IMG/VR virus record: IMGVR_UViG_3300024265_000603
Span: 1 to 16,315 of that record
Strand: one strand, 5' to 3'
Length of the DNA stretch: 16,315 bases
Under the pieces are notes generated by a model. It searched no databases and was not told where the DNA came from. It was given only the letters and a program-made list of their open reading frames with translations. The first letter of the stretch is position 1. The number at the start of each line of letters is the position of its first letter. The position numbers were made by a program, and so were the translations under genes. Below are positions 2,062 to 15,691 of the stretch, piece after piece.

Positions 2062-2100
2062 CTTTTGGATAACTACGTTTTTGTAATTATCTTACAAAAG
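2062..2100 (-). promoter_or_regulatory. Bulged intergenic hairpin H1
   Basis: - strand CTTTTG-TAA-GATAATTAC-AAAAAC-GTAGTTATC-CAAAAG; one U.G wobble. Confidence 0.7.
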
Positions 2101-2110
2101 AAAAAATTAA

Positions 2111-2296
2111 TTATAATCTTATATCTACTCTTTCAATATCATTTAGATTAGTAATTAGATAAGTACCTAATTCAAAATAACTCATTTCTGATTCTTTATA
2201 ATTAATAGTATGATAATCTTTATCATATATTCTAACAAGAAACTTTTGTTCTTTACTAATCTCTAATGCTTGACCAATAATATCCTTTAATTCCAT
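2111..2296 (-). CDS. Hypothetical protein
   Basis: Track ORF 2111..2305; ATG after the junction motif. Confidence 0.7.
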   Translation of the reverse strand: MELKDIIGQALEISKEQKFLVRIYDKDYHTINYKESEMSYFELGTYLITNLNDIERVDIRL

Positions 2297-2301
2297 ATTA
2301 T

Positions 2302-2394
2302 TCACTTTCTTATGATTAAATCTATTATTATTGGTGTAAGAAAAGCAATAATTCCGTATATCAACACTAATATATAAAAGTATTTATCTTTCAT
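2302..2394 (-). CDS. 30-aa membrane micropeptide (MKDKYFYILVLIYGIIAFLTPIIIDLIIRK), paralog of 819..908
   Basis: Hand-translated; SD-like AAGGTG upstream; stop lies in the junction motif. Confidence 0.65.
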   Translation of the reverse strand: MKDKYFYILVLIYGIIAFLTPIIIDLIIRK

Positions 2395-2397
2395 ATC

Positions 2398-2670
2398 TTA
2401 CACCTTTTTATTTTCTGATTTCTTTTTATCATAGTTCAATTTAGCAATTCTTTCTATATCATAATATATTATTATAGCAGACATAATTATAATTCCACAC
2501 TTAATATAGAAAATTAAAGCTATTACAAAAATGCTTCTGAAATTCTTTACAAATAAACTTATAATAATAATATCTATAGCATTTATTATTATTATGCTAA
2601 ATAATGTTCTATGAAAAAGATTCCACCTTTCATTATTTAATTTAATTTTTTTAAATTGTAATTTTTTCAT
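2398..2670 (-). CDS. Two-TM membrane protein
   Basis: Track ORF 2398..2679; two hydrophobic stretches. Confidence 0.7.
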   Translation of the reverse strand: MKKLQFKKIKLNNERWNLFHRTLFSIIIINAIDIIIISLFVKNFRSIFVIALIFYIKCGIIIMSAIIIYYDIERIAKLNYDKKKSENKKV

Positions 2671-2678
2671 ATTATTCA

Positions 2679-2717
2679 CTTTTGGATAATTACGATTATG
2701 TAATTATCTTACAAAAG
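2679..2717 (-). promoter_or_regulatory. Bulged intergenic hairpin H2
   Basis: 6-bp lower stem, TAA bulge, perfect 9-bp GATAATTAC/GTAATTATC stem, 6-nt loop. Confidence 0.7.
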
Positions 2718-2723
2718 AAAATT

Positions 2724-3026
2724 TTAAATAATTATTGTATGATTAACTAAATTAATAGTATATATAGAATACCTTAATCTAATCAATAATGTAATTGCTT
2801 GAATTATTTCTTTATAGAATTCATCAAAATTAAGATGATTAGAAGGTATTTCTAAAGCTTCTTTACTCATTTCACCAATTTCCTCCATTATTATTACAAT
2901 CCACTTTTCAATAGTGTGAGTTTGATTAGGAAATTTTTTATCTTGAAATCTATATTCTTTCTCAATTTCTCTTAAAAATATTGATAATTTATTTTCTACA
3001 AAACTTTTCCAATTTTTATTTACCAT
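2724..3026 (-). CDS. MazG-like all-alpha nucleotide pyrophosphohydrolase
   Basis: E-x-x-x-Q-D-x-K-F, W-x-x-I-I-x-EEIGE-x-S-K-E and E-I-I-Q pattern typical of viral MazG-like proteins. Confidence 0.75.
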   Translation of the reverse strand: MVNKNWKSFVENKLSIFLREIEKEYRFQDKKFPNQTHTIEKWIVIIMEEIGEMSKEALEIPSNHLNFDEFYKEIIQAITLLIRLRYSIYTINLVNHTIII

Positions 3027-3037
3027 ATATTATTCAC

Positions 3038-3073
3038 TTTTGCTTAATCAGTAATTCTGATTAAGTATCAAAA
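3038..3073 (-). promoter_or_regulatory. Bulged intergenic hairpin H3
   Basis: TTTTG/CAAAA lower stem, 3-nt bulge, CTTAATCAG/CTGATTAAG stem, 5-nt loop. Confidence 0.7.
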
Positions 3074-3079
3074 ATAAAA

Positions 3080-3250
3080 TTATTTTCTATTGTATGGTTT
3101 AGTTCTTATTATTGTATCCACTACTAACTTAAATCTTTTACTAAATTCATAATGAATTATATCAAAATCAGAGTTATTTGGATTTGGTTTTAAATATAAG
3201 GTTAGTATTCTTTTATCTGTATTTACAATTACTTTATCAATTTCTTTCAT
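3080..3250 (-). CDS. 56-aa hypothetical protein (MKEIDKVIVNTDKRILTLYLKP...)
   Basis: Hand-translated; fills the gap between H3 and the upstream ORF. Confidence 0.6.
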   Translation of the reverse strand: MKEIDKVIVNTDKRILTLYLKPNPNNSDFDIIHYEFSKRFKLVVDTIIRTKPYNRK

Positions 3251-3252
3251 AT

Positions 3253-3519
3253 TTAATCAGTATCAGTCATTTTTATATTATTTAATTCATTATCTAAACT
3301 TTTAATTTTAATATTTGATATTGTTGTATCAATAGAAATTTGCTTTAATGTTAATTCATTAATAGCTTGTAATAATACAAGATTATTAAAACTGTGTAAT
3401 TCTCTTTTACTTAGACAATTTCTAAATTCTTGTATAAATAACTTTATAGTAGTAAAAGAAATATCTGGATAATTCATTAAAGTACTCTGAATCCAAATAA
3501 GAAATTTTTGTATTTTCAT
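3253..3519 (-). CDS. Hypothetical protein
   Basis: Track ORF; SD-like GAGGT and TAATG overlap with the upstream gene. Confidence 0.7.
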   Translation of the reverse strand: MKIQKFLIWIQSTLMNYPDISFTTIKLFIQEFRNCLSKRELHSFNNLVLLQAINELTLKQISIDTTISNIKIKSLDNELNNIKMTDTD

Positions 3520-3677
3520 TAATTTACCTCTGATTCTAATTTAAAGATTTTTACTATATAATTTCCTTTCGGTAAATTAAGTTCTTTTATATGGTTTGGA
3601 ATTCTAATTGTTAAATTTACCGGTGTATTATCTTTATATTTTTTCCAAATCCATTCAAATTTAAAGATTTCTTTCAT
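3519..3677 (-). CDS. 52-aa putative AbrB/SpoVT-like DNA-binding protein
   Basis: Hand-translated; LTIRIPNHIKELNLPKGNYIVKI resembles the AbrB swapped-hairpin pattern; junction motif upstream. Confidence 0.5.
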   Translation of the reverse strand: MKEIFKFEWIWKKYKDNTPVNLTIRIPNHIKELNLPKGNYIVKIFKLESEVN

Positions 3678-3686
3678 ATTATTCAC

Positions 3687-3722
3687 TTTTGCTTAATTAG
3701 TAATTCTAATTAAGTATCAAAA
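3687..3722 (-). promoter_or_regulatory. Bulged intergenic hairpin H4
   Basis: Same as H3 apart from a compensatory C-G to T-A change (CTTAATTAG/CTAATTAAG). Confidence 0.7.
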
Positions 3723-3728
3723 ATAAAA

Positions 3729-4160
3729 TTATTTAATTAATGAAACTATGTATACTTCAGCTTTACCTTTAAAGTTTGGTGTATCAATTTTAGCCATTGT
3801 TTTAGAAATTTGAATAATATGACCAATTAATTTTTCAAGTATTCCTTTAAAATGTTTTTGAATTAATACAGCCAATTGAAATTGAAAGCTTCTACCATTG
3901 GCATTAAATTGGTAAATGACATCATTCATTTCTAATAACATAGTATCATAAGTGTTTCCATCAGCAAATAAAGTCGGTGTAGGTAAAGAATGAACTTTTA
4001 CATTAAAAACATCAGAGACATTATCCCTTTCATTATAACTAACTTTTAATGTTGGTAATATATTAAGTTTTGAGACTTTATCCACTTTTTCCATTTCTAA
4101 ATTATCCATGAAGTTATAAACTTCTTTTTCTGTATCTTTTTCCTTTACCAAATTTTTCAC
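3729..4160 (-). CDS. Hypothetical protein, possible OB-fold ssDNA-binding protein
   Basis: 143-aa track ORF; beta-rich core ending in Y-x-V; lies near the replication genes; start uncertain (GTG 4160 or TTG 4151). Confidence 0.6.
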   Translation of the reverse strand: MKNLVKEKDTEKEVYNFMDNLEMEKVDKVSKLNILPTLKVSYNERDNVSDVFNVKVHSLPTPTLFADGNTYDTMLLEMNDVIYQFNANGRSFQFQLAVLIQKHFKGILEKLIGHIIQISKTMAKIDTPNFKGKAEVYIVSLIK

Positions 4161-4162
4161 TT

Positions 4163-4200
4163 CCTTTCACTAATTAGTTTATCTAATTAGTTTAAAAAAG
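4163..4200 (-). promoter_or_regulatory. Bulged intergenic hairpin H5
   Basis: - strand CTTTTT-TAA-ACTAATTAG-ATAAA-CTAATTAGT-GAAAGG; the lower stem pairs fully only with U.G wobbles on the - strand. Confidence 0.65.
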
Positions 4201-4218
4201 AAATTCTTAATTAGATTA

Positions 4219-4506
4219 TTAAAATTTAAATGATTCTTGTTCATTTTTACTTTTTGAGAATTTAGCTAATGTATTAGAGTAAGCTTCTGAAATAGAATCA
4301 AACATAGCTTCGACTTGTTCTGTACTGTATTCATAATTAACTCTTTTAGAACAATTACCAAGAATCCTTAAAGCTCTCAAAACATTTATTACTCTTAAGG
4401 GTGCTATTCTAAGAAAAGTTTCTGATTTTGTTTCTTTCTTTTCATTAGGCTTCTTATCTGTTTTTTTAACAGATTCCTTTTTTTCTACTTGTTTTTTATC
4501 TGGCAT
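4219..4506 (-). CDS. Conserved hypothetical helical protein (ETK...F-x-R-I-A-x-x-R...LGNCS...NYEYS-x-E-Q-V family)
   Basis: Track ORF; motif recalled from a widespread family of unknown function; first gene after the leftward TATA box. Confidence 0.8.
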   Translation of the reverse strand: MPDKKQVEKKESVKKTDKKPNEKKETKSETFLRIAPLRVINVLRALRILGNCSKRVNYEYSTEQVEAMFDSISEAYSNTLAKFSKSKNEQESFKF

Positions 4507-4540
4507 AATATTATACCTATATAATAAATGGTTTAGTTCT

Positions 4541-4553: not shown

Positions 4554-4601
4554 TTTAGACAAGTAATTGGATTTGTTTAAACAATATATAAATAAATTTT
4601 G

Positions 4602-4651
4602 AAAAAGTGAAAAATGTTCATTTTAAATTAAAAAAAGTGAAAATTGTTCAT
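4602..4651. repeat. Two 20-bp direct repeats with an internal TGAA-N5-TTCA dyad (operator-like)
   Basis: AAAAAGTGAAAAATGTTCAT (4602-4621) and AAAAAGTGAAAATTGTTCAT (4632-4651), 30-bp period. Confidence 0.6.
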
Positions 4652-4705
4652 AGACCAATTTTGTTAAAAGCTTTCCATCATTTTATAGCATATCAACTTT
4701 TTAAA

Positions 4706-5188
4706 ATGAAAAATATGGTTTCTAAAGAGCAAAAAATAAAGGAAATTAAAGTAATCATAGGTAATAATCCTTCTCTTAATTCAAGTGAAACACTCAGGTT
4801 AATACAATCAGAAGGTTTAGGAATCCGTAAACAAGAATTTCAAACTTTATTTAGAGAACAGAGACAATTACCAGAACCTACAAAAGAGAAAAAAGAAAAA
4901 TCTGTACCTATAAAGTTTAGAAAGGGAATAGGAATAACCCCTATTGATAAACCAGATAAACCAAAAAAGGAGGGTCAATATGGAGTTATTGAAGTAATTG
5001 ATAATAAAGGAAATAGTTTTTGGATAAAGTATCAGAATAAAAAAGATTTTAATAGGCAATTAGAAAAAATTAAATCAAAATATTCTGTTAAAAAATTAAA
5101 ACTTGTTTCTCATGGCTTTAGAAATTATGTAGATTTCATTGATAAAGAGTTTAGGGAAATCTTAGAAACCGAGGGTATTATTTCATAA
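4706..5188 (+). CDS. Basic protein upstream of pPolB; candidate terminal protein or DNA-binding protein
   Basis: Track ORF 4607..5188, but its first 33 codons cover the regulatory repeats, so ATG 4706 or 4715 is preferred; S-x-x-x-L-R...GLGIRKQ helical motif. Confidence 0.7.
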   Translation: MKNMVSKEQKIKEIKVIIGNNPSLNSSETLRLIQSEGLGIRKQEFQTLFREQRQLPEPTKEKKEKSVPIKFRKGIGITPIDKPDKPKKEGQYGVIEVIDNKGNSFWIKYQNKKDFNRQLEKIKSKYSVKKLKLVSHGFRNYVDFIDKEFREILETEGIIS

Positions 5189-7125
5189 AAAATAATTTTC
5201 ATGAATTTAGAAAGAATAAGAAGTTAAAGATTCAATCTAATTTCATTTTTGTTGATACTGAAAGTTTCTCTAATAAGAATATTCCTAATAAAGAAATCTT
5301 AACCTTTAAAGTAGGTTGCTTAATTACATGGAATAAAGAAAGTAATGAAATAAATAAAAATACTTTTTATGATGTAAAAGATTATTGGAAAACTGTAGAA
5401 AAGTGTTTTTCTAAGGATAAAAGAAATCTTATTATGTTTGCTCACAATACTCAATTTGATTTTCTTATGTTAGATGGCTTTAACCAATTATTACATAATG
5501 GATGGCAATTAAAAAGCCATTATGTAAAAAGCAAAACTTTTATTCTTGTATTTAAAAAATTATGTATAGATAATAAATATTATACCTTACATATTTGGGA
5601 TACTATGAATTATGTACCGGAATCATTAGATAAAATTGGCATATCTGTTGGTTATCCTAAATTATCTATAGATTTTGATAAAGTTTCAGATAAAGAACTT
5701 GAAATATATTGTATGAGAGATACAGAAATTATATATGAATTTATTAAAAAATTAATTAATTTCTTAGAAGTTAATGATTTAAGTAGACTAAAAGCTACTT
5801 CTGGAAGTTTATCTTTTAATACTTTTAGACATAAATTCTATAAACCAGAAACACATAAGATTTATATTCATGATTGGAAAAGAGCAATAAAGTTAGAACG
5901 TGAAAGTTATAAAGGTGGAATTACTGATTGTTTTAAAATAGGTACTCATAAAGATTTGTATAAACTTGATATTAATTCTATGTATCCATCAATAATGAGA
6001 AAATCTTTATTACCTATAAAATTATTATTTAGTTCGCATGAATCTAATTATTCTCAAAAAGATTTATTCAAAATATATAAATTAAGTGTGAAAAAAGGTT
6101 ATGGCTGTATAATAAAAGCAACAATTAATCTTAATTATAACAATCCTTATATTCTACATAATTTTGGTACTGGTAAAGCTTTATTTAGTTATGGTACATT
6201 TAAAGTAAGTATTTGTCAACCAGAAATAGATTTTATTATGAAATATGGAAAAATATTAACTATTCATGAGATTAATGTGTATAAAATGAAAGTTATTTTT
6301 AAGGATTTTGTTGATTTCTTTTATAAAATAAAAACTGATTCTCAAAAAAATAATGATAAAATTACCACCAGATTTGCTAAACTTATGCTTAATACTCAAT
6401 ATGGTAAATGGGGTCAAAGACAACTTGACTACATGAGTTTAGATATTACACATAAATTTATGATTGAATTTCAAGAAGTAATTAAACTTATGATAATTAA
6501 AATGAAAGAAAAATTACCTAATTTCAATTTAAGTAAAGATATAGTTTATTTAGGGTCAATTATTAATGAGGGTGAACTTTATATAGTAAATGGTAAATTA
6601 TATTTACTGAAACAAACAAACAGTAATGCTAAAGATTCTTTTGTTGCCATAGCTTCTTTTATTACATCATATTCAAGAATGTTATTAATAGACTATTTAA
6701 AAATAGCTAAAAGAAAAAATGTCTTTTATGTTGATACTGATTCTTTATTTGTAAATCAATCTGGATATAATAATCTTGAAAAAGATGATTGTATTAATGA
6801 ATTTGGATTAGGAAAGTTAAAACTTGAAGAAACTGGTGTAGGAAGCTTCTACGCACCTAAATTCTATGATTTTAATGATAATCGTAAAATTAAAGGTATT
6901 AATCAAAAATCATCTATTATTCTACTTGAAAATAATAAGAAAGTAGTTTATCAAGTTCATTTATGGAAAAAATTTAAATCAAACCTTAAAGATGGATATA
7001 AACCAGAACAAGAAATCCAAACAACAACAAAAGAAAGTAAAAAATATTATGATAAGGGTAAAATAGATGATTTTAATAATGTAATACCTTTCTCTGTTAG
7101 AGAAATTGAACTTATGATTAAATAA
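5185..7125 (+). CDS. polB: Protein-primed family B DNA polymerase (~646 aa if initiated at ATA 5185)
   Basis: ExoI FVDTE (5248-5262), ExoII AHNTQFD, ExoIII YCMRD, SYKGG, PolA LDINSMYP, PolB KLMLNTQYGKWG, PolC YVDTDS, KGI; frame open from 5155; the first ATG (5434) would delete ExoI; start position is inferred. Confidence 0.95.
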   Translation: MKNNFHEFRKNKKLKIQSNFIFVDTESFSNKNIPNKEILTFKVGCLITWNKESNEINKNTFYDVKDYWKTVEKCFSKDKRNLIMFAHNTQFDFLMLDGFNQLLHNGWQLKSHYVKSKTFILVFKKLCIDNKYYTLHIWDTMNYVPESLDKIGISVGYPKLSIDFDKVSDKELEIYCMRDTEIIYEFIKKLINFLEVNDLSRLKATSGSLSFNTFRHKFYKPETHKIYIHDWKRAIKLERESYKGGITDCFKIGTHKDLYKLDINSMYPSIMRKSLLPIKLLFSSHESNYSQKDLFKIYKLSVKKGYGCIIKATINLNYNNPYILHNFGTGKALFSYGTFKVSICQPEIDFIMKYGKILTIHEINVYKMKVIFKDFVDFFYKIKTDSQKNNDKITTRFAKLMLNTQYGKWGQRQLDYMSLDITHKFMIEFQEVIKLMIIKMKEKLPNFNLSKDIVYLGSIINEGELYIVNGKLYLLKQTNSNAKDSFVAIASFITSYSRMLLIDYLKIAKRKNVFYVDTDSLFVNQSGYNNLEKDDCINEFGLGKLKLEETGVGSFYAPKFYDFNDNRKIKGINQKSSIILLENNKKVVYQVHLWKKFKSNLKDGYKPEQEIQTTTKESKKYYDKGKIDDFNNVIPFSVREIELMIK

Positions 7126-7151: not shown

Positions 7152-7166
7152 AAAAAACTTTAAAAG
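7152..7166 (+). promoter_or_regulatory. Putative BRE/TATA promoter for the capsid and structural genes
   Basis: AAAAAAC-TTTAAAAG in the polB-MCP intergenic gap; SD-like AAGTTGA at 7217-7223. Confidence 0.5.
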
Positions 7167-7229
7167 TGAACATATCTTATTATTAATTAACTTTACCTAA
7201 AAATTTTTCATTTAAAAAGTTGATTTTTC

Positions 7230-7472
7230 ATGGCAAATGACATAAAAAGGGTAATTTTAATTGCTGTTGCTTTAATGGTAATTGGTGTTATTATCCCTAT
7301 TGCTGTTGGTTTAGTTGCGAATGCGGGAAATGTAGTGGTTAATTCTACGAGTGGTGAGAGATTGTCTGCTATAGCAGACCCTTCTGTTGTACTAATGATT
7401 GAAGTCTTGATTCCTATAATTGCTGTAATTGCTATTGTTTTAATGTTTTTACCAAGTAAAACTGGTACTTAA
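7230..7472 (+). CDS. Major capsid protein, spindle-shaped virus type (His1 major capsid protein/SSV1 VP1-like helical hairpin)
   Basis: 80 aa; two long hydrophobic helices (...VIGVIIPIA... and ...VLIPIIAVIAIVL) joined by a loop with an N-S-T sequon; own promoter and terminator; first gene of the structural block. Confidence 0.8.
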   Translation: MANDIKRVILIAVALMVIGVIIPIAVGLVANAGNVVVNSTSGERLSAIADPSVVLMIEVLIPIIAVIAIVLMFLPSKTGT

Positions 7473-7504
7473 TAAACCAGTATTTACTATTTTTTTATTT
7501 TTTT
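7461..7504 (+). terminator. Putative terminator after the capsid gene
   Basis: ACTGGT/ACCAGT inverted repeat followed by oligo-T tracts at about 7490-7504. Confidence 0.55.
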
Positions 7505-7510
7505 ATTAAG

Positions 7511-7681: not shown

Positions 7682-10600
7682 TGAAAAAATTTAAAAGTTC
7701 TTTAGTTCTATTATTTGTTTTAATTGTTTTTACCTTATCAAGTATTCCTTTAAATGTAAAAGGAGTTTTACCAGATTCCATAGACTATACGTTTGCTAAT
7801 AATAATTTATATGATACAACTAAACCAATTTTCAATGAATCTACTAATGTGAATGTTAGAGATGTAAGTGAATATACTCAATTTTATAATGCCACTTTTG
7901 ATTTTAATAATGAAATAGTTGGTACAAATGGAACAAACATAGACTTTATAGATTTAGCCACTATTGGTGTAGATACTACAATTCAAATAATCTCATTATT
8001 GAACGGACATAGGAAAGTCTTAGAGTTAAATGATAATGATGTAGGGGCAGAAGTTATAGGACAAAATACATTTGATTCTACTCGATTATTTGGTACTATT
8101 GAGCTTTTTATTCGAAATACGGATACATCTCTAAGAACAGATATTTTAATTAGAAGTGGTATTACTAATGCTTTACAAGTTGCGATAGCAGGAAATACAG
8201 CAAATCAACTTCAATATTTTGATGGTATTTGGAATAATATTGTTTCAATTATAGATAATATTTGGTATCATATTAGAATAGATTTTGAGTGTGGTGCTGA
8301 TGGTTATGAAAGTCTCGCACCAGATACATTTCATATTTATGTTAATGGAATAAAGTATTCTGATTTATCTTTTAGGAATACTGTATCAACTGTTAATAAT
8401 TTAAGACTTCAAACAAATGTAGGGAATAGTGGTTATTTTACCTATTTTGATGCTATTGGTTATAGTTGGTTTAAACCAAATTATAATTTTACTAATGATG
8501 TTATTGGAAGTTTTCCAGAGTTTTGGATAAATAATGATGATTTTCCAAATATGACAACTGTTATAGCTTCTTTAGATGGTAATACTAAAGTAATGGAAAT
8601 GAATGATTTTACCAGAGACGGTACAACTTCCAGTAGTCTTTCTTTTAATAGGAATCAAGATGGCTTTATTCAATTTCTTATAGCAAAAGATAATTTATCT
8701 AATGATGCCCATGGAAGGTTTAGATTTCAAGAAGGTAATAATGAAAGAATGAGATTTAGTTTTATTGGTGCTGATTTATATTACCTTCACGCAAATACAA
8801 GTACCGAATTATTTGTTAGTAATGCTTTAAGTTTAATAAATACTTTTACTGATTTTAAATTTGTTTTAGATGATACTAATAATGAAGTGGATTTATATAT
8901 TGATGATATTCTTAAACAGTCTAATGTAAATTATTTTACTAACACAGTAGATACAATTAATAAAATAACTATTCAAACCGTAGAAGCTTCAGTACCAGAT
9001 TCAATTTATAGAATGTTTTTTGATGATTTTGATTTTAATCATTTAACCATAAATACCTCAATTAATAATATTATACCTCACATTGAAACTAATCCTTTTT
9101 TAAAAGAAGTGGATACATTTACTTTCGATTTAGTTTCTGCTAACACCCTTTATGATATAGGTACTGATAATCCTTCTGGTTGGTCTGATGTAGAAAATGG
9201 TTTTGACCATACTAATATAGCGCAAGATAATACAGATATACCTTCAGGAAGTAGAACTAATAACAGAGTAGTTCAAATTGAAGGTGTTGGTTCTGATAAT
9301 GCTATTAGTGGAATAGAAAAAGATTTTAATATTTCAAGTGGAATTTTTAATATTACAATGAAATATAATTATAGTTTAAATAATAATGATTTAGGAAGTT
9401 TTATTATTTCTATTTTTACTCAAAATTTACAATTACAAGTAAAAATTAATTGTACTTTTGTAAATGCTATATTTGGTAACCAACTTGATTATAGAAATTC
9501 AAGTTTTAAAAATGTAGAATTAATTCCATTTTTAGATTCTACTATTGCTATAAACCAAGAAGTTAGTTATAATATATACATAGATTCTTTTGTTGTATTT
9601 AGAGCAACAACAGAAGGAAGTTTAGGATTCCATTCTTATAATTTTACTTTTCCTTTAATAAATCCAGATTCTTTTGGTTTAGGTAAAATAATGATTATTT
9701 CTGACCCTACAAATGTAGGTGGTACATTTCAAACAATAGAGCTTAAAGAAGTAGGTGTTTATCATAACGGAATTTCTTTATCTGATGATTTTGGTTATTT
9801 ACCTTCAGTAATTTCTGATAATGCTTCTTTCTTTTGGCAATTTTTAGCACATAATTTAATAACAATAGAAGTTTTAGGTAATATGGCAATTCATGCCACT
9901 TCTTTTAATGAGTGGATATTAGGTGGTAATATGGAAGTTATAAGTAATATGGACACTTTTAATTTAACTCAGAGAATAATTAATGTTTATTTTCAAGATT
10001 TTGTTCATTTTGGCTTTTTAGGTATCCCTACACCTATGATTGTATTTTTTATTACTTCTCAATTTAATTTAACAAGTATAAGTATTAATGGAATAAAGTT
10101 TTCTGATGATACCCCTCACGATTTTGGTTTTCTTGCTTATGAATCTGGTGGTGTAGATAATAATGTAAGTTATTTCTTTTTAGATTCAAGTAATACATTA
10201 AAATATTTTCATACTACTGATGATAATAATGTAAATGAATTTATTCAGGCTGAGTTAGTTATTGGTGGTTTAGACACTAATAATACAGCAATACAGTTTA
10301 ATTCTAATAAAGATAATAATGCCTTTGGTTTTTTCAGAGTAAGTTATGTATCAACATCAACTATATTTAAAATACAATCAATTTTTAAAACTACTATATC
10401 TATATTACCTAATTCTAAATCTATTATTTCATATATAATTTTAATAACTGATAATAATGATAATACTGTTTCTGGTTTAACAACTGGTTTTGTTTCTAAT
10501 ATTAAATTATTATTTACTGAACAACAAATAGTTTCTGTAATTACATTTTCTTTATTATCTGTTTTAATTCCTTTAATTATTATATTAATACCAAGTTTAG

Positions 10601-10994: not shown

Positions 10995-11444
10995 ATGCTT
11001 ATAGGATTAAGTTTATTTGTAATAATTATATTAGGTTTTCTTTCCATTATGTTGGGAAGTGAGTATTTAGCTAATACTATAAATGTTGGAATTGATAACA
11101 CTTCACTTGTAAATGGTTCAATTACTACTTATGTTGTAGAAACAGAAACAGTTTTATTTGAAATAGATACTTCTGTTTTTATTGTTGCGGGAATTGCTTT
11201 ATTGATAACTGTTGCCATTGTTGCGGGAATTACTGGAATTCAAGTTTTGGGTTCTGGTTTAAACAGTGAAAGTGTTAAAATAATAATTATGATAACAGCT
11301 TTTACAGGAATTTGGATTACTCTGTCAATAATAGCTATTAATTTAATTTCCAGTATAGCTATTTTTGGAAGTATTATTTATATAGGATTAACACTAATGT
11401 ATGTAATTGGTGTAGTACAGAAATTAACTGGAGGTGGTGGATAA
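10995..11444 (+). CDS. Multi-TM membrane protein (putative minor virion protein)
   Basis: About four hydrophobic segments; NTS and NGS sequons; SD GAGGT. Confidence 0.85.
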   Translation: MLIGLSLFVIIILGFLSIMLGSEYLANTINVGIDNTSLVNGSITTYVVETETVLFEIDTSVFIVAGIALLITVAIVAGITGIQVLGSGLNSESVKIIIMITAFTGIWITLSIIAINLISSIAIFGSIIYIGLTLMYVIGVVQKLTGGGG

Positions 11445-11777
11445 ATGATTGATTTCTTACAAGCAGAACCATTTCCACCAACAGATATAGAAGCTGTAGC
11501 AATAACTAATATAGGTTTAATGTATGCTCATATATTTATTTTGATTTTTTTATTACTATTAATGTTATTTTTATATTTAAAATCATCAAAAGAATTAAAG
11601 GAAGGTTTACCAATATTAGTAATATATCTGTTTTCATTATTAATTGGAATAAAAAGTTTTGAGCATCCACATACACCATTTAGCCCTTTACTTGAATCAT
11701 TTTTTCTAATATTTCAAACAGTTATATTCTTATTAACAGCTTTTAATGTATATGATAATAAAATGAAAAGTAGATAA
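11445..11777 (+). CDS. Three-TM membrane protein
   Basis: Hydrophobic; SD GGAGGTGG; abuts the upstream stop. Confidence 0.85.
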   Translation: MIDFLQAEPFPPTDIEAVAITNIGLMYAHIFILIFLLLLMLFLYLKSSKELKEGLPILVIYLFSLLIGIKSFEHPHTPFSPLLESFFLIFQTVIFLLTAFNVYDNKMKSR

Positions 11778-11780
11778 ACT

Positions 11781-12539: not shown

Positions 12540-13231
12540 TGTTAGTAATTATACTTGGCAATTTAGGGAGCGGTAAAACTTATATTATGATGTTATTAGC
12601 TTATCAAGATAAAAGACAAATATTATCTAATTTTAATATAAAAAGAAAGAATGTAAAGGTAATTGATGTACCAGATTTACTTGATTTACCAGATGATATA
12701 GTTTTATTAATGGATGAAGCTTATAGTTGGATTGAATCCAGAAGTAGTCTTGATTCATTGAATAAATATTTATCAAGTGTTTTATTCCATATTAGAAAAA
12801 CCAATACTGATATTTATATTACTACACCAATGTATTCTACAATAGATAAAAGGTTTCGAAATCAGGCTAATTATATAATTTTTTGTAAACATAGAAATAA
12901 TTTTGAATCTGATGATTTTCATTTTTTATTCTATGATGTAAATAATAGAACTTATGGAATTAGTACACTAAAGTATTCTGAAGCTAAAAAATACTTTCAT
13001 TTATATGATACTAATGAAAAAGTAGAATCATACAAGAAAAGAGGTTTACAATTCAATATCTTAAAAAAATATCCAGAAAGAATGAAAGAATATATAAAAC
13101 AAATATCAAAATTAGCAAATAAACAATTAAATGGTAATATTACTCACGACAGAGTAAAGAAATTTCTATTTGATAATGGAATTGATTTAGGTTTTCATTC
13201 ATTTCTATATATAGATTTAAAAGGTAATTAA
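12539..13231 (+). CDS. P-loop morphogenesis/extrusion ATPase (Zot/inovirus pI-like, as in spindle-shaped viruses)
   Basis: Walker A GNLGSGKT at the N-terminus, Walker B LLMDEA, HIRK and IDKRFR motifs. Confidence 0.88.
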   Translation: MLVIILGNLGSGKTYIMMLLAYQDKRQILSNFNIKRKNVKVIDVPDLLDLPDDIVLLMDEAYSWIESRSSLDSLNKYLSSVLFHIRKTNTDIYITTPMYSTIDKRFRNQANYIIFCKHRNNFESDDFHFLFYDVNNRTYGISTLKYSEAKKYFHLYDTNEKVESYKKRGLQFNILKKYPERMKEYIKQISKLANKQLNGNITHDRVKKFLFDNGIDLGFHSFLYIDLKGN

Positions 13232-13232
13232 A

Positions 13233-13406
13233 ATGATAACAACAATAAAGATAACAAAATATATTAAATTACAACAATGTTCTAATCATGGTTTAAAGGT
13301 TTTCTTAAAATATAAGGGTAAATGGATAATGATTAAATTAACAAATTATCAAGTAGAATTATTACAATATATATTAAATATTATAAATGGTAAACATGAA
13401 AAATAA
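13233..13406 (+). CDS. 57-aa basic hypothetical protein (MITTIKITKYIKLQQCSNHG...)
   Basis: Hand-translated; SD-like AAGGT; fills the gap after the ATPase. Confidence 0.55.
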   Translation: MITTIKITKYIKLQQCSNHGLKVFLKYKGKWIMIKLTNYQVELLQYILNIINGKHEK

Positions 13407-14202
13407 ACTAAAAAGAATTTTTGCTTCGGTTAGATATTCATTAATGTTTAAAACAATGAAATATATAACACCAATAATGTATGAAAAGTTTATTATCTTA
13501 AATAATATCTGGAAAAGTAAAAATCATATTGGTGGCAAATTAGATAATGTAAATAGAATTCCAAGACCAGCAATATTATTTATAAAAAAATATTTTAAAG
13601 ATAAACTAATTACTGGATTAGAATTAGGTGTTAAATTAGGTAAAAATTCTGAAAGTATTCTAAAAGAGTTAAATATTCAAACTCTTTATCTGATTGATGC
13701 TTGGGATGATTATGTTGCGAATGAAATAACTAAAGAAGGGCAAAAAAGACATTACTTACTTACATTGAAAAAATTTAAAGATGATAATAGAGTAAAAATA
13801 ATAAAGGGTTTTTCCGAAAATATTGTTCATAGATTTGATAATGAGAGTTTGGATTTTGTATATATTGACGGAAATCATAGTTATGATTTTGTTTATCAAG
13901 ATATAACTATATGGAGTAAAAAAGTAAAACAAAATGGAATTATATCTGGTCACGATATTTTTAATTTTAATGATGTATTATCAGCTGTTAAGAAGTGGAG
14001 TATAAAAAATCAATATAATTTCTTTATAAAACCACCAGATTGGTATATTATAAAGAAAGATATTATTACTTGTAAAGAATGTAGTTATTGTAATAAAGAA
14101 TTAGATATATGTACTTATGAAAGTATTGAGAAATTATCAAATAAAAATCTTGAAATTTGTATTTGTTTTATGCCAATAATGAATTATAATATAAGAAAAT
14201 GA
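13387..14202 (+). CDS. Class I SAM-dependent methyltransferase (Methyltransf_24-like) with a Cys-rich C-terminal tail
   Basis: GLELGVKLG, LYLIDAW, LDFVYIDGNHSY and GIISGHD motifs; CKECSYC...C...CIC tail; start 13387 or 13396. Confidence 0.88.
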   Translation: MVNMKNKLKRIFASVRYSLMFKTMKYITPIMYEKFIILNNIWKSKNHIGGKLDNVNRIPRPAILFIKKYFKDKLITGLELGVKLGKNSESILKELNIQTLYLIDAWDDYVANEITKEGQKRHYLLTLKKFKDDNRVKIIKGFSENIVHRFDNESLDFVYIDGNHSYDFVYQDITIWSKKVKQNGIISGHDIFNFNDVLSAVKKWSIKNQYNFFIKPPDWYIIKKDIITCKECSYCNKELDICTYESIEKLSNKNLEICICFMPIMNYNIRK

Positions 14203-14327
14203 AAACTAATAAATTAAAAATGTGTTGGATTAAAGGGAATCCATGTTTTAACCAAACCAATGATGTAAGAAAATGTATTGAATGTAGTATATGGAGTAAA
14301 GAATATAGAAATAATAATAATAATTAA
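14199..14327 (+). CDS. 42-aa four-cysteine metal-binding peptide (CWIKGNPC...CIEC)
   Basis: Hand-translated; ATGA overlap with the methyltransferase stop. Confidence 0.6.
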   Translation: MKTNKLKMCWIKGNPCFNQTNDVRKCIECSIWSKEYRNNNNN

Positions 14328-14329
14328 CT

Positions 14330-14599
14330 ATGAAAAATAAATATAAATTCTTAATTTGTATTATAGCATTAGGAATATTAGCTTCAGTTTCTTTAATTGT
14401 ACCAAGTGAATCTAAAATGGTAATACCTTCTAAAGTAATTAATTCTACTTGTATTGGAATGTGTGGAAGTAAACCTTTACAAGATATAGAGTTTTTTATA
14501 TTTTTAACAGTATTATTACCTTTATTTGCTATAGTACTTTTTATTTTTCTATTTATGTTTGATAAGGATAAAAAGAAAAATAAGATTAATCGTGAATAA
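14330..14599 (+). CDS. Two-TM membrane protein
   Basis: Two hydrophobic helices; loop with NST and CxxxC; basic tail. Confidence 0.7.
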   Translation: MKNKYKFLICIIALGILASVSLIVPSESKMVIPSKVINSTCIGMCGSKPLQDIEFFIFLTVLLPLFAIVLFIFLFMFDKDKKKNKINRE

Positions 14600-14639
14600 T
14601 TGTTTACCATTAACAGTTTAATGATTAAATGTTTCATAA

Positions 14640-14834
14640 TTATCTTTCAATTAATATTTGTTTAATCATATCATATTTTCTAACTAATACAGTTAATTCA
14701 GAATCTAAAATATCAAATCTAACTTGATTTTTAGTGTTTATAGCTTCTGTATATTGATTAAAAACTTCAAAAATTTGCCATCCTACAAATCTATACATTG
14801 AGTATAAATTTTTAAGTTTTCTATTAATTGTCAT
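14640..14834 (-). CDS. Hypothetical protein
   Basis: Track ORF; converges on the + strand block. Confidence 0.6.
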   Translation of the reverse strand: MTINRKLKNLYSMYRFVGWQIFEVFNQYTEAINTKNQVRFDILDSELTVLVRKYDMIKQILIER

Positions 14835-14931
14835 AAATAATAATTGATTCCTTAGAATAAGAATTTACTCATTATACTAAATAAGAGAAAAAAGTTCCAT
14901 AATTTTAAAATAAAAGAAAAAGAAAAAATAT

Positions 14932-15111
14932 TTAATAGTATTTAAAAGAATTAATCAAACAAATGTTCATTCTTGAAAAATCAAATTTATCTATTAATCT
15001 TTTTGAAGGTTCTTTACCTACATTACCTTTTACAACATATTGATAATTTATTAATTCATTACCTAAATAATCTTTCATGTATAAAGTTATTAATTTTATT
15101 TTATCAAACAT
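14932..15111 (-). CDS. Hypothetical protein
   Basis: Track ORF 14932..15120; ATG after AAAAGTGAAAACT; followed by a T-rich tract. Confidence 0.6.
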   Translation of the reverse strand: MFDKIKLITLYMKDYLGNELINYQYVVKGNVGKEPSKRLIDKFDFSRMNICLINSFKYY

Positions 15112-15116
15112 AGTTT

Positions 15117-15317
15117 TCACTTTTGGTTTATTTTTATTATTATAGATTTAGGAATCCAAATATTTTGTTTAACAGAATGGTGTACAGCTATTACAGGGTG
15201 TAGTTTAAAATGAATAGCTTTATTAGTTTCTTTTATAATATTTCCATCTAAACAATTAGGATTTCTCATAAGATTATTCTTTTTTAGAAACCATTCTGGT
15301 AAATAAATACTTATCAT
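15117..15317 (-). CDS. Small beta-rich viral protein (IIKETxKA...WIPKS family)
   Basis: Motif recalled from small phage and archaeal-virus hypothetical proteins; SD-like GAGTTGA. Confidence 0.75.
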   Translation of the reverse strand: MISIYLPEWFLKKNNLMRNPNCLDGNIIKETNKAIHFKLHPVIAVHHSVKQNIWIPKSIIIKINQK

Positions 15318-15332
15318 TTTTAATCAACTCTA

Positions 15333-15367
15333 TTTGGTTATTTAGGATTATCTAAATAACTTTCAAA
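15333..15367 (-). promoter_or_regulatory. Bulged intergenic hairpin H6
   Basis: TTTG/CAAA lower stem, 3-nt bulge, GTTATTTAG/CTAAATAAC stem, 6-nt loop. Confidence 0.7.
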
Positions 15368-15375
15368 AAGAAAAA

Positions 15376-15645
15376 TTAAAATATGTAATAACCTTCTTTA
15401 AATGCTTTATCAATAGATTCTTTATTATCTTTATACACATTTTCACATTCTAAAGAACAAAAATCAGATTTAGGTAATATTTTAAAAGTACTTCCACAGG
15501 CTTTACATTCTCTATGTTCTTTACACAGTCTAATAGAAATAATACCTCTACTCTCAAGATAATTAGTAAGATTATTACATCCATAAACAGAACATAAATC
15601 ATTTTTTAGAACTTTTTTAGGTGGTATAATATTATTATATGTCAT
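15376..15645 (-). CDS. Double zinc-finger protein
   Basis: CSVYGC...CKEH followed by CKAC...FCSLEC; track ORF 15376..15654. Confidence 0.75.
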   Translation of the reverse strand: MTYNNIIPPKKVLKNDLCSVYGCNNLTNYLESRGIISIRLCKEHRECKACGSTFKILPKSDFCSLECENVYKDNKESIDKAFKEGYYIF

Positions 15646-15654
15646 AGTTTTCAC

Positions 15655-15691
15655 TTTTGGTTATTTAGGTTTGTCTAAATAACTTTCAAAA
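15655..15691 (-). promoter_or_regulatory. Bulged intergenic hairpin H7
   Basis: Same upper stem as H6 with a different loop. Confidence 0.7.

What the first reader, a model, noticed from the sequence alone, without database searches (positions are those of the whole stretch)
2062..15691. Seven structurally conserved bulged hairpins at gene junctions in both arms
Seen: hairpins at 2062-2100, 2679-2717, 3038-3073, 3687-3722, 4163-4200, 15333-15367 and 15655-15691. On the - (coding) strand each reads: upstream stop, U-rich 5' arm, exactly 3-nt bulge (UAA/AUA/AAA), 9-bp stem, 5-6 nt loop, then a 3' arm running into the next gene's RBS (usually AAAAGUGA). The upper-stem sequence varies (GATAATTAC, CTTAATCAG, CTTAATTAG, ACTAATTAG, GTTATTTAG) while the geometry is fixed. 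H3 and H4 differ by a compensatory base pair. The mismatches in H1 and H5 are G.U wobbles only on the - strand. Inference: selection acts on a single-stranded structure. It could be an mRNA element (processing site, protein-binding site, or RBS-occluding switch opened by the ribosome terminating a few nt upstream) or an attC-like ssDNA recombination site formed on the displaced strand during protein-primed replication. I know of no described element like this in spindle-shaped viruses.
Basis: partly seen in the sequence, partly recalled or inferred. Interest (0 to 1): 0.85.

Follow-up and report, generated by a model that had tools for sequence, protein, structure and literature searches.

The report
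Bulged RNA hairpins between early genes
Small hairpins of one fixed shape sit between the early genes of WyrdV3, a spindle-shaped virus of Asgard archaea, and of its relatives. Compensating base changes show that the shape is selected on the messenger RNA, probably to control translation of the next gene, and I found no earlier description of it.

Summary
The window is the complete linear genome of wyrdvirus WyrdV3. All seven hairpins are at the stated coordinates, all on the coding (-) strand. Each has a basal stem of 4-10 bp, a 3-nt bulge on the 5' side, a 9-bp upper stem and a 5-6-nt loop. A descriptor of this shape finds exactly these seven; shuffled sequence gives 0.5.

With covariance models and by folding intergenic gaps I found 31 such elements in 13 related genomes, always on the strand of the flanking genes. 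A sequence-only alignment gives the same structure from RNAalifold. 12 of 15 pairs show compensatory changes, and 22 different upper-stem sequences share one geometry. Mismatches are G.U on the sense strand about 9:1. The selected object is therefore an RNA, or at least a sense-strand, structure.

The element fills the gap between one gene's stop codon and the next gene's ribosome-binding site. My best mechanistic guess is that it couples translation of the two genes, and that the upper hairpin is also recognised by a protein. Nearly identical copies flank unrelated genes, and synteny breaks at them, as at the PeSL cassettes of T4-type phages. An attC-like role in ssDNA is not supported. No Rfam family matches, and the Asgard-virus papers I read do not mention the element.

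The parts
2062..2100 (-). H1: bulged hairpin between gene 2111-2305 and gene 1895-2054. The basal stem is CUUUUG/CAAAAG, the bulge UAA, the upper stem 9 bp with one U.G, the loop 6 nt.
   Evidence: Folds; descriptor; CM R1 scores 75.5 bits.
2679..2717 (-). H2: near copy of H1 (92% identical) between gene 2724-3026 and gene 2398-2670.
3033..3078 (-). H3: bulge AUA, upper stem CUUAAUCAG/CUGAUUAAG, loop 5 nt. The 10-bp basal stem covers the whole GUGA SD of gene 2724-3026.
3682..3727 (-). H4: differs from H3 by one compensatory pair. The whole 59-nt intergenic cassette is 97% identical to that of H3 although the flanking genes are unrelated. Homology with relative L093 ends at its downstream edge.
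   Evidence: repeat family D5.
4159..4204 (-). H5: leader hairpin of the conserved ~140-aa early gene F1. A hairpin holds this position in all 13 genomes that carry F1.
15333..15367 (-). H6: right-arm copy, bulge AAA, upper stem GUUAUUUAG/CUAAAUAAC, upstream of gene 15117-15317.
15654..15692 (-). H7: right-arm copy, 95% identical to H6 over 41 nt, upstream of the Zn-finger gene 15376-15645.
   Evidence: repeat family D4.
4203..4215 (-). Conserved stop-codon-rich motif UCUAAUUAAGAAU just 5' of H5. The same motif precedes the 'ACUUUUUU...' type of hairpin in L022, L061, L016, L087 and L088, where it can form a small 5-bp stem-loop.
   Evidence: Sequences. The upstream stop codon falls at different places within the motif in different copies.
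2052..2062 (-). Example of the SD and start (GUGAAUAAUAUG) that follows each hairpin. The same junction motif joins at least 10 early genes that have no hairpin.
   Evidence: repeat families D2, D3, D10 and D12; distances.
3729..4160 (-). F1, a conserved early gene always preceded by the hairpin; predicted OB-fold protein resembling single-stranded-DNA-binding proteins (SSBs). The inference is weak.
   Evidence: AlphaFold2 model with pLDDT 77. The 50 best PDB matches are all SSBs, but with E-values of 7e-3 to 5e-2 and TM-scores of 0.2-0.47.
4219..4506 (-). F2, a conserved early gene with a Lys-rich tail and two long helices. In 7 relatives (L087, L088, L022, L016, L061, L093...) it is itself preceded by a hairpin; in the window it is the first gene of the arm and has none.
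1895..1938 (-). Possible relic: basal-stem arms ACUUUUU/AAAAAGU without an upper stem, inside a coding region.
   Evidence: Weak match to CM R2, 27.3 bits, E = 0.04. Not followed up.

Best explanation
The hairpins are cis-acting structures in the sense-strand RNA of the polycistronic early transcripts of WyrdV3 and its close relatives. Each is a two-part module.

(1) The invariant upper part is a 9-position helix closed by an A-rich 5-6-nt loop, set off by a 3-nt 5' bulge. It is a stable clamp and probably a handle for a protein.

(2) The basal stem pairs the U-tract that follows the upstream stop codon with the A-rich leader, and often the GUGA SD, of the next gene.

Where the upstream stop codon lies within a few nucleotides of the stem, a terminating ribosome must melt the basal stem. 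That frees the downstream ribosome-binding site, so translation of the downstream gene is coupled to that of the upstream gene (the 'RNA unfolding' model). Where the element follows a long T-rich spacer, the SD is left outside the stem, and the hairpin would act only as a leader structure.

Because the whole stop-to-start cassette is repeated almost identically within a genome, it also serves as a joint for homologous exchange of early ORFan genes.

Shown: the structure, its selection, its strand and its position. Inferred: translational coupling, protein recognition and the recombination role.
For: Structure and selection:
- 27 CM matches in 9 genomes, all on the strand of the early genes.
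- Four more elements of the same architecture but unrelated sequence in L096, L002 (same as L019) and L018, found by folding intergenic gaps.
- A MAFFT alignment of 31 elements, made from sequence alone, gives the same consensus structure from RNAalifold, with 12 of 15 pairs compensatory.
- 93-98% of cells are paired, against 36-61% when the 3' partner is slid. No shuffle out of 500 reaches the observed values.
- 27 of 31 folds have a (3,0) bulge, and the 5' arm of the upper helix has 9 positions in nearly all.

RNA and sense strand:
- 28 G.U cells against 4 A.C cells; about 9 independent G.U events against 1 A.C in the upper stem (binomial P = 0.011).
- 23 of 186 co-directional intergenic gaps carry the motif in sense and 0 in antisense.
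- The orientation flips with the genes in L002, L018 and L019.
- RNA folds are much stronger than ssDNA folds.

Coupling:
[quoted passage not shown] From the stem end to the start codon the median is 8 nt, range 3-24.
- The SD starts inside the stem in 14 of 15 elements whose stop codon is 6 nt away or less, against 5 of 13 where it is further (Fisher P = 0.004).
- Early genes without a gap use an overlapping SD-stop-start junction.
- The RNA-unfolding model and its spaced examples (rpmI-rplT, f1 genes VII/IX) are reviewed in PMC12548453.

Cassette exchange:
- H3 and H4 are 97% identical over 59 nt between unrelated genes. Paralogous copies within a genome are 92-100% identical.
- Homology between the window and L093 stops at the downstream edge of H4. 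L087 has an insertion of four genes and one hairpin, relative to L088, at the F1 hairpin.
Against: There are no transcript or ribosome data, so every functional step is inferred.
- The SD is only partly covered in many copies, the start codon is never covered, and in 9 of 28 scored elements the SD is outside the stem.
- The basal stem is short and A-U rich.
- Translational coupling does not explain why the 3-nt bulge and the 9-position helix are held so exactly, also in copies that follow a long T-rich spacer where no terminating ribosome is near.
- The link between stop-codon distance and SD position was noticed after the fact, and many copies are related by descent.
- The U-tract of the 5' arm could itself be an archaeal termination signal or part of a TATA-like box (see rivals).
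- Breakpoints are expected in intergenic DNA anyway.
Confidence: 0.45

Rival explanations
1. Processing or stability site. The fixed bulge-helix geometry is recognised by a host or viral endoribonuclease, or simply blocks exonucleases. The polycistronic early RNA would then be cut into, or protected as, monocistronic units with hairpin ends, as at the RNase III sites between T7 early genes.
For: The geometry is conserved regardless of whether the SD is in the stem. The elements sit between early cistrons of a small linear genome. The copies after T-rich spacers look like 5'-terminal leader hairpins. Total helix length is 15-19 bp with one asymmetric interruption.
Against: Archaea are reported to lack RNase III (PMC11404451). 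The archaeal splicing endonuclease needs two bulges 4 bp apart, which is not the case here. No nuclease gene was recognised in the genome. There are no RNA-end data.
Confidence: 0.2
2. Translational operator for an RNA-binding regulator. A viral protein (for instance the SSB-like F1 or the basic F2, both of whose genes carry the hairpin) or a host protein binds the bulge and loop, and represses or activates the adjacent ribosome-binding site. This would give a timed shut-off of early genes, in the manner of T4 gp32 or RegA.
For: The bulge size, helix length and A-rich loop closed by G-C are invariant while the helix sequence is free, which suggests recognition of shape. F1 and F2 are the two conserved genes that keep the hairpin in nearly every genome. 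The F1 model resembles OB-fold SSBs.
Against: No RNA-binding domain was detected. The SSB-like fold match is weak. The F2 model has low confidence. Nothing links any protein to the element.
Confidence: 0.15
3. Composite DNA-level regulatory cassette, an archaeal counterpart of T4 PeSLs. The T-run is an oligo-T terminator, or together with the A-rich 'bulge' a TATA-like box. The fixed 9+5/6+9 = 23-24 nt sets the TATA-to-start spacing, so that each downstream gene gets its own short SD-bearing leader. The palindrome would then be an attenuator or incidental.
For: Every element has T3-6 followed by an A-rich triplet. From there to the 3' basal arm is a constant 23-24 nt, close to the archaeal TATA-to-start distance (own knowledge). 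PeSLs likewise span stop codon to ATG and hold a stem-loop between promoter boxes (PMC2839356). The cassettes are repeated next to ORFans, and synteny breaks at them.
Against: A promoter alone needs neither compensatory changes in both helices nor a sense-strand G.U bias. The covarying G/C positions inside the T-run and the A-run show that the two arms must pair. If transcription started at the 3' arm, no RNA would hold the hairpin. Archaeal promoters cannot be scored with the tools at hand (one search covers sigma-70 only).
Confidence: 0.12
4. attC-like, or otherwise ssDNA, recombination or replication signal folded on the strand displaced during protein-primed replication.
For: Bulged hairpins lie between small gene 'cassettes', gene content breaks at them, and the genome replicates by strand displacement (pPolB, 324-bp TIRs).
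Against: No tyrosine recombinase or other integrase was found among the ORFs of 190 aa or more. There are no RYYYAAC/GTTRRRY cores (sequences). The left-arm and right-arm copies are on the same strand, and the orientation follows gene direction in relatives with inverted early genes. ssDNA folds are only -5.8 to -7.2 kcal/mol, with z-scores of -1.5 to -3.3, and are equal on both strands.
Confidence: 0.03
5. Double-stranded palindromic operator bound by a dimeric transcription factor.
For: Many upper stems approximate CTAATTAG-N5-CTAATTAG, a pair of palindromic half-sites. The virus encodes several small Zn-finger proteins.
Against: 22 different arm sequences, four types within the window alone, keep symmetry through compensatory change. 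There is a G.U bias on one strand. The second, basal helix and the one-sided bulge have no meaning in duplex DNA.
Confidence: 0.03

Closest known systems
PeSL (promoter-early stem-loop) cassettes of T4-type phages (Arbiol et al. 2010, PMC2839356; Comeau et al. 2014, PMC4122927)
   Same: [quoted passage not shown] Both hold an AT-rich tract, a stem-loop and the SD, and both are concentrated in the early, ORFan-rich, plastic part of the genome. Near-identical copies flank unrelated genes, and gene insertions and replacements between relatives break at them.
   Different: There is no sequence or evolutionary relation (bacterial myoviruses versus an archaeal spindle-shaped virus). PeSL stem-loops are G/C-rich terminators placed variably among sigma-70 promoter boxes. 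Here the hairpin is A-U rich, has one fixed bulged geometry, is not terminator-like, and shows RNA-type covariation. Promoter activity is untested here, and mini-circles are unknown.
RNase III processing hairpins between the early genes of phage T7 (own knowledge)
   Same: Both are repeated intercistronic hairpins in the early region of a small linear virus genome. Both have upper and lower helices separated by an asymmetric interruption, with geometry conserved more than sequence, and both affect or could affect the stability and translation of neighbouring cistrons.
   Different: T7 sites have an internal loop and about 20 bp or more of helix, and a known enzyme cuts them. Here there is a one-sided 3-nt bulge and 15-19 bp of helix, and the hosts are archaea, which are reported to lack RNase III. 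Cleavage is not shown.
Translational-coupling structures that work by RNA unfolding (rpmI-rplT, f1 genes VII/IX, MS2 coat-lysis; review PMC12548453)
   Same: An inhibitory helix involves the downstream ribosome-binding site, and its other arm lies within reach of the ribosome finishing the upstream gene.
   Different: The known cases are single, idiosyncratic structures. Here one stereotyped module is reused at many junctions in many genomes and carries an extra invariant upper hairpin. Coupling is inferred, not measured, and has hardly been studied in archaea.
Integron attC sites
   Same: Both are imperfect hairpins with extrahelical bases between small gene cassettes, conserved in structure more than in sequence.
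   Different: attC sites act as folded ssDNA with an IntI tyrosine recombinase, have R/L core boxes and a variable central part, and lie 3' of promoterless cassettes. None of these features was found here.
Archaeal bulge-helix-bulge (BHB) and bulge-helix-loop motifs cut by the splicing endonuclease; kink-turns bound by L7Ae (own knowledge)
   Same: Both have a 3-nt bulge flanked by helices in archaeal RNA.
   Different: BHB needs two 3-nt bulges on opposite strands 4 bp apart (or a loop 4 bp from the bulge). Here there is one bulge, 9 positions from the loop. A kink-turn needs tandem sheared G.A pairs after the bulge. Here the pairs next to the bulge are Watson-Crick or G.U.

Membership tests
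Rfam families (any described RNA family) | Match to a curated covariance model | tested here: not met
   A cmscan of the whole window at E <= 1 gave one unrelated sub-threshold snoRNA match at 11423-11521 and nothing at the hairpins.
PeSL-type regulatory cassette | Repeated intergenic cassette from stop codon to start codon, containing a stem-loop and the SD, next to ORFans | tested here: met
   The cassettes fill the gap (median 4 nt from the stop codon, 8 nt to the start codon), and paralogous copies are 92-100% identical between unrelated small genes.
PeSL-type regulatory cassette | Contains a functional early promoter | not testable with these tools
   Only a sigma-70 scan is available. 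A T-run plus A-rich triplet at a fixed 23-24 nt from the 3' arm is TATA-like, but the genome is about 78% A+T.
PeSL-type regulatory cassette | Stem-loop acts as a transcription terminator | tested here: not met
   The hairpins are A-U rich, and an A-run rather than a T-run follows them on either strand. None is listed by the terminator scan. The test is bacterial-type only; archaeal oligo-T termination at the 5' arm remains possible.
PeSL-type regulatory cassette | Gene insertions and replacements between relatives break at the cassettes | tested here: met
   Collinearity between the window and L093 ends at the H4/L093:156 hairpin. The extra block in L087, relative to L088, abuts the F1 hairpin. 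Only two comparisons were made.
Translational coupling by RNA unfolding | The downstream ribosome-binding site is sequestered in a helix | tested here: inconclusive
   The SD starts inside the stem in 19 of 28 elements, fully covered only in those with 9-10-bp basal stems. The start codon is never paired.
Translational coupling by RNA unfolding | The other arm of the helix is within reach of the ribosome translating or terminating the upstream gene | tested here: met
   The stop codon is 6 nt or less from the stem base in 17 of 31 elements. The SD is inside the stem in 14 of 15 scored elements of that group, against 5 of 13 otherwise (P = 0.004).
Translational coupling by RNA unfolding | Downstream expression depends on upstream translation | not testable with these tools
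   This needs reporter or ribosome-profiling data.
Integron attC site | An integron integrase (tyrosine recombinase) is associated | tested here: not met
   Pfam and PHROG scans of all ORFs of 190 aa or more found a pPolB, a Zot-like ATPase, a methyltransferase and three proteins with no match, but no recombinase.
Integron attC site | R''/L'' and L'/R' core boxes (RYYYAAC ... GTTRRRY) | tested here: not met
   The arms are U-run/A-run with no such cores (alignment).
Integron attC site | Functions as a folded single DNA strand | tested here: inconclusive
   The strand follows transcription rather than replication polarity, and the ssDNA folds are weak. There is no direct test.
Bulge-helix-bulge / bulge-helix-loop motif | Two 3-nt bulges (or a bulge and a loop) separated by a 4-bp helix | tested here: not met
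   There is a single 5' bulge and 9 positions to the loop in 27-31 of 31 elements.
Kink-turn | 3-nt bulge followed by tandem sheared G.A pairs | tested here: not met
   The two pairs after the bulge are standard pairs that covary (columns 11/34 and 12/33).
RNase III substrate (T7 R-site type) | About two turns of dsRNA cut by a host RNase III | not testable with these tools
   Helix length is 15-19 bp. Archaea are reported to lack RNase III. The host genome is not at hand.
Wyrdviruses (genome context) | Identity of the contig, and the module of pPolB, small MCP-sized ORF, large adhesin-sized ORF and Zot-like ATPase | tested here: met
   The window is Ga0209976_10001089, named WyrdV3 in bioRxiv 10.1101/2021.07.29.453957. 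pPolB and the ATPase were found; the 80-aa and 1027-aa ORFs gave no family match. polB relatives are named Lokiarchaeota, Hermodarchaeota or Promethearchaeota MAGs.

The most novel reading that the evidence does not exclude
The invariant bulge-helix-loop geometry is the recognition module of a protein that nobody has yet identified, either an Asgard host factor or a wyrdvirus early protein. That protein would cut or bind polycistronic mRNA between cistrons. This would be an archaeal intercistronic mRNA processing or control system that does the job of the RNase III sites of T7 in a domain that lacks RNase III. The same module might then be used in host operons too.
Probability: 0.2. Interest if true: 0.8.

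Novelty: new variant of a known kind. Interest (0 to 1): 0.58.

Why it matters
Almost nothing is known about how genes are expressed in Asgard archaea or in their viruses, because the viruses are known almost only from metagenomes.

This element would be the first cis-regulatory RNA structure defined for them. There are enough natural variants (31 copies, 22 different helices) to design clean tests.

If it couples translation, it is a reusable natural 'junction part' for archaeal operons, and it opens a view on how Asgard ribosomes handle structured intercistronic RNA. If a protein reads the bulge, it points to an unknown RNA-binding or RNA-cutting activity.

The cassette-like spread also suggests how these small viruses swap early ORFan genes, in parallel with the PeSLs of T4-type phages. 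That would be convergent evolution of a mechanism across domains.

The covariance model can also serve as a marker for this wyrdvirus lineage in metagenomes.

Tried and rejected
- Exact-pattern scans of IMG/VR. The SD junction 17-mer gave only chance matches apart from the window itself. A structured pattern for the 'ACTTTTTT' hairpin type gave nothing.
- Sliding-window MFE scans were too unspecific in this A+T-rich DNA, because coding regions reach similar energies. A plain stem scan likewise finds many 8-10-bp hairpins by chance. The bulge and the basal stem are what make the family specific.
- The covariance models R1 and R2 do not reach relatives below about 60% polB identity. The divergent members had to be found by folding intergenic gaps.
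- Pfam and PHROG scans of ten early proteins gave nothing above threshold.
- The F2 structure model is of low confidence (pLDDT 68), so I did not search with it.
- The sigma-70 and intrinsic-terminator scan does not apply to archaea and flags none of the hairpins.
- I considered and rejected these readings, for the reasons given under membership: bacterial-type terminator, K-turn, BHB motif, attC site, dsDNA operator. [quoted passage not shown]

Full report
WHAT THE WINDOW IS. The 16,315-bp window is a complete linear genome with 324-bp terminal inverted repeats that are 98% complementary. It has about 22% G+C. [quoted passage not shown] It also holds a 1027-aa ORF and an 80-aa ORF at 7230-7472 of the size expected for a spindle-virus capsid protein; neither gave a family match. 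The window is identical to IMG/VR contig UViG_3300024265_000603 and to JGI contig Ga0209976_10001089. Medvedeva et al. named that contig WyrdV3, a wyrdvirus of Asgard archaea (bioRxiv 10.1101/2021.07.29.453957). Homologues of the polymerase carry names such as Lokiarchaeota, Hermodarchaeota and Promethearchaeota MAG.

THE OBSERVATION. Small early genes lie on the - strand in a left arm (about 4506 down to 540) and in a short right arm (15855 down to 14932). Each has a basal stem of 4-10 bp, a 3-nt bulge on the 5' side only, a 9-bp upper stem and a loop of 5-6 nt. Free energies are -11.8 to -15.4 kcal/mol, with z-scores of -3.6 to -5.1 against dinucleotide shuffles. A mechanical descriptor of this shape returns exactly these seven, all on the - strand; 0.5 are expected in shuffled sequence, with a maximum of 3 in 200. 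I wrote the descriptor after seeing the seven, so it shows that they form a discrete family rather than giving an unbiased probability. Plain 8-10-bp hairpins are common in this A+T-rich DNA. The bulge, the second helix and the position are what make the family. Seven of the eight gaps of 30 nt or more between co-directional - strand genes hold the element, and the late + strand module holds none. The + strand versions fold less well for H1 and H5 because their non-Watson-Crick pairs are G.U only on the - strand.

RELATIVES. A covariance model built from the seven copies (R1) was run over 75 metagenome loci that encode related polymerases and over contigs fetched through polymerase homologues. 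It found 27 full matches in nine genomes (window, L016, L022, L061, L087, L088, L093, L094, L095) and a truncated one at the end of L089. Every match lies on the strand of the early genes and inside an intergenic gap. A second model built from the 27 copies (R2) added nothing further. By sequence, then, the family stops at about 60% polymerase identity.

Folding the intergenic gaps of more distant relatives showed the same architecture with unrelated sequence. L096 has two such elements, with upper helices such as CAUUCAAGC/GCUGAAUG and GUGUUAGGG/CCCUAACCG. L002, which equals WyrdV2 (L019) at this site, has one, and L018 has one. In L002, L018 and L019 the early genes lie on the same strand as polB, and the hairpin has switched strand with them.

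A census covered all 186 co-directional intergenic gaps of 30-140 nt in the related loci. It found the 5'-bulged motif 23 times in the sense orientation and never in antisense.

SELECTION ON STRUCTURE. I cut 31 elements out at the base of the stem. They are 36-41 nt long, mostly 38-39. I aligned them by sequence alone with MAFFT. RNAalifold then returned exactly the proposed structure, and 12 of the 15 pairs have compensatory double changes. On this alignment 93% of cells are paired, against 36-61% when the 3' partner is slid by 1-3 columns. None of 500 column shuffles reaches the observed pairing, covariation score or number of compensatory cells. The model-fitted alignment gives 98%.

All nine pairs of the upper stem covary. 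So do three basal pairs, including the G or C positions embedded in the U-run and the A-run (CUUUUG/CAAAAG, UGUUUG/CAAACA, UUUGUUUUU/GAAAACAAA). The basal stem is therefore not a by-product of a U-tract lying near an A-rich leader.

The set contains 22 different 5' arms of the upper helix. Even so, 27 of 31 folds have a (3,0) bulge, and the 5' arm has 9 positions in nearly all, also where one position is a mismatch or a 1-nt bulge. The copies are related by descent, so these counts are not independent events. The shuffle control is known to be exceeded by related sequences, but the slid-partner control and the number of pair types are robust to that.

WHICH STRAND, WHICH MOLECULE. Non-Watson-Crick cells are G.U on the sense strand in 28 cases and A.C in 4, and some of the latter are artefacts of alignment. 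Counting independent events in the upper stem gives about 9 G.U to 1 A.C (binomial P = 0.011). Duplex DNA, or a structure on the other strand, would show no such bias.

Orientation follows the flanking genes in all 31 elements and 13 genomes. In the window, the left-arm and right-arm copies lie on the same strand. Protein-primed replication starting at the two ends would first displace opposite strands there. In L002, L018 and L019 the orientation relative to the genome end is reversed, but relative to the genes it is not. As ssDNA the folds are weak (-5.8 to -7.2 kcal/mol, z-scores -1.5 to -3.3) and alike on both strands. I therefore take the selected object to be the sense RNA, with a confidence of about 0.85-0.9.

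POSITION. The 3' end of the whole stem lies a median of 8 nt (range 3-24) from the start codon of the next gene. The GUGA Shine-Dalgarno sequence begins between 7 nt inside the stem and 11 nt beyond it. The upstream stop codon lies a median of 4 nt from the 5' base of the stem, but up to 58 nt away where a long T-rich spacer intervenes. The element is thus tied to the downstream gene.

The SD starts inside the stem in 14 of 15 scored elements whose upstream stop codon is 6 nt away or less. It does so in 5 of 13 where the stop codon is further off (Fisher P = 0.004; I noticed this after the fact). Early genes with no gap are joined by an overlapping SD-stop-start junction, GUGAAUAAUAUG.

This is what the RNA-unfolding model of translational coupling predicts (review PMC12548453). 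A ribosome with the stop codon in its A site covers and unwinds the next 6-9 nt or so (own knowledge). That stretch is the 5' arm of the basal stem, so the SD on the other arm is released while the upper hairpin stays folded.

Coupling alone does not explain why the bulge size and the upper helix length are held so exactly. It explains this least for the copies that follow T-rich spacers. Some protein probably reads that geometry.

CONSERVED PARTNERS. Clustering the early proteins gives a conserved core: F3 ... hairpin - F2 - hairpin - F1 ... F4. The hairpin upstream of F1 (about 140 aa; window 3729-4160) is present in all 13 genomes that have F1. Its sequence turns over completely between lineages. 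An AlphaFold2 model of F1 (pLDDT 77) has single-stranded-DNA-binding proteins as its 50 best PDB matches. The scores are weak, with E-values of 7e-3 to 5e-2 and TM-scores of 0.2-0.47. An SSB would be expected in a strand-displacement replicon. F2 has a Lys-rich tail and two long helices (low confidence). No early protein matches a Pfam or PHROG family above threshold. Autoregulation by one of these proteins is possible but unsupported.

CASSETTE BEHAVIOUR. Within a genome, copies are 92-100% identical (H3/H4, H1/H2, H6/H7, three copies in L087, two in L022). The identity covers the whole stop-to-start spacer (59 nt at 97% for H3/H4) while the genes on either side are unrelated.

Two comparisons between genomes show breaks at the hairpins. 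The window and L093 are collinear at 75% identity from polB down to the downstream edge of H4, which corresponds to L093:156-208, and are unrelated beyond it. L087 carries four extra genes and one extra hairpin between the F2 spacer and the F1 hairpin, relative to L088.

This is the behaviour described for the PeSL cassettes of T4-type phages. Those also run from stop codon to start codon, hold an AT-rich tract, a stem-loop and the SD, cluster among early ORFans, and mediate modular exchange by homologous recombination (PMC2839356; PMC4122927). Two comparisons are few, and breakpoints are expected between genes anyway. I rate this role as plausible, not shown.

A DNA-LEVEL RIVAL WORTH KEEPING. 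Every element has a T-run followed by an A-rich triplet. From there to the 3' basal arm is a constant 23-24 nt, which is close to the archaeal TATA-to-start distance. PeSLs also carry a stem-loop between promoter boxes. A composite terminator-promoter cassette is therefore conceivable. It cannot by itself explain the covariation in both helices or the G.U bias, and it cannot be tested with the tools at hand. Mapping of RNA ends would settle it.

WHAT IT IS NOT.
- It is not a member of any Rfam family.
- It is not a bacterial-type terminator.
- It is not a kink-turn: there are no G.A pairs after the bulge, and those pairs covary as standard pairs.
- It is not a bulge-helix-bulge or bulge-helix-loop motif: there is one bulge, 9 positions from the loop.
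- It is not an attC site: there is no recombinase, there are no core boxes, and the strand logic is wrong.
- It is not a duplex operator, given the many arm variants and the one-strand G.U bias.

NOVELTY. The paper that described WyrdV3 does not contain the words hairpin, stem-loop or promoter. Two 2026 papers on Asgard viruses do not mention such an element either. It is a new RNA motif family of a familiar general kind, the intercistronic regulatory hairpin or regulatory cassette. It stands out for its strict geometry and for its host domain. So far it is seen only in one wyrdvirus lineage. One further candidate lies in a more distant relative (L038).

VERDICT. The reading as a single-stranded structure is supported, as RNA. 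The attC-like alternative is not supported. The mechanism, translational coupling together with a protein-recognised clamp and with cassette exchange as a side effect, is a reasoned guess at about 0.45.

Noticed in passing
window 5155-5433 (+): The ExoI motif of the polymerase (FIFVDTES) is encoded in the polB reading frame upstream of the first ATG/GTG/TTG at 5434. The frame is open from about 5155 and overlaps the end of ORF 4607-5188. Relatives have a polB of about 640 aa that includes this part. This suggests a non-canonical start, a frameshift, or a fusion with the upstream (terminal-protein?) ORF in WyrdV3 and in its closest relatives, whose polB is annotated at about 560 aa.
   Followed up: partly
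window 7157-7175 (+) and 4603-4650 (+); L096 gap 4992-5107: The motif UUUAAAAGUGAAC, which resembles the early-gene SD, occurs about 60 nt upstream of the capsid-protein-sized ORF (7230-7472). It occurs twice in the divergent intergenic region, each time followed by a mini-ORF of 5-7 codons. L096 has two copies upstream of the ORF at the same position in its genome. It could be a promoter element, a standby site or a leader-peptide signal.
   Followed up: no
window 7461-7505 (+): A short G/C-containing hairpin (ACUGGU...ACCAGU) followed by two long T-runs lies directly after the 80-aa ORF (7230-7472, the likely capsid gene). It is the only terminator-like arrangement I saw, and it differs in kind from the early-gene hairpins.
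   Followed up: no
window, - strand junctions at about 813-824, 1134-1145, 1352-1363, 1533-1544, 1750-1761, 1893-1904, 2296-2307: A stereotyped SD-stop-start junction, (AAAA)GUGAAUAAUAUG, joins early genes that have no hairpin. The upstream stop codon UAA lies between the SD and the AUG. This suggests termination-reinitiation along the whole operon.
   Followed up: partly
window 819-906 and 2309-2396 (-): Two paralogous hydrophobic peptides of about 29 aa (MKEKYY.../MKDKYF...), 78% identical at the DNA level (repeat family D8), too short for the ORF list.
   Followed up: no
window 1-324 and 15992-16315; 15930-15971 / 16023-16064: The 324-bp terminal inverted repeats are G-rich on one strand. 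Inside them and just beyond them are subterminal direct repeats of about 42 nt (repeat families D17 and I4). These may be origin or terminal-protein binding repeats.
   Followed up: no
window 3729-4160 (-): The conserved early protein F1 is modelled as an OB-fold protein. Its 50 best PDB matches are all single-stranded-DNA-binding proteins, with weak scores. It is probably the SSB of this strand-displacement replicon.
   Followed up: partly
L038 about 10040-10085 (-): A hairpin with the same architecture (8-bp basal stem, 3-nt 5' bulge, 9-position upper helix, 5-nt loop) lies in a relative with only 49% polB identity, about 80 nt upstream of a gene start and not next to an SD. It may be chance or a distant family member.
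   Followed up: no
L018 3501-3545, L092 879-923, L096 3054-3179: A separate conserved hairpin (GAGUUUAGAA...UUCUAAACUU) lies just upstream of the polB start in several relatives. The window has a diverged version at about 5201-5240.
   Followed up: no
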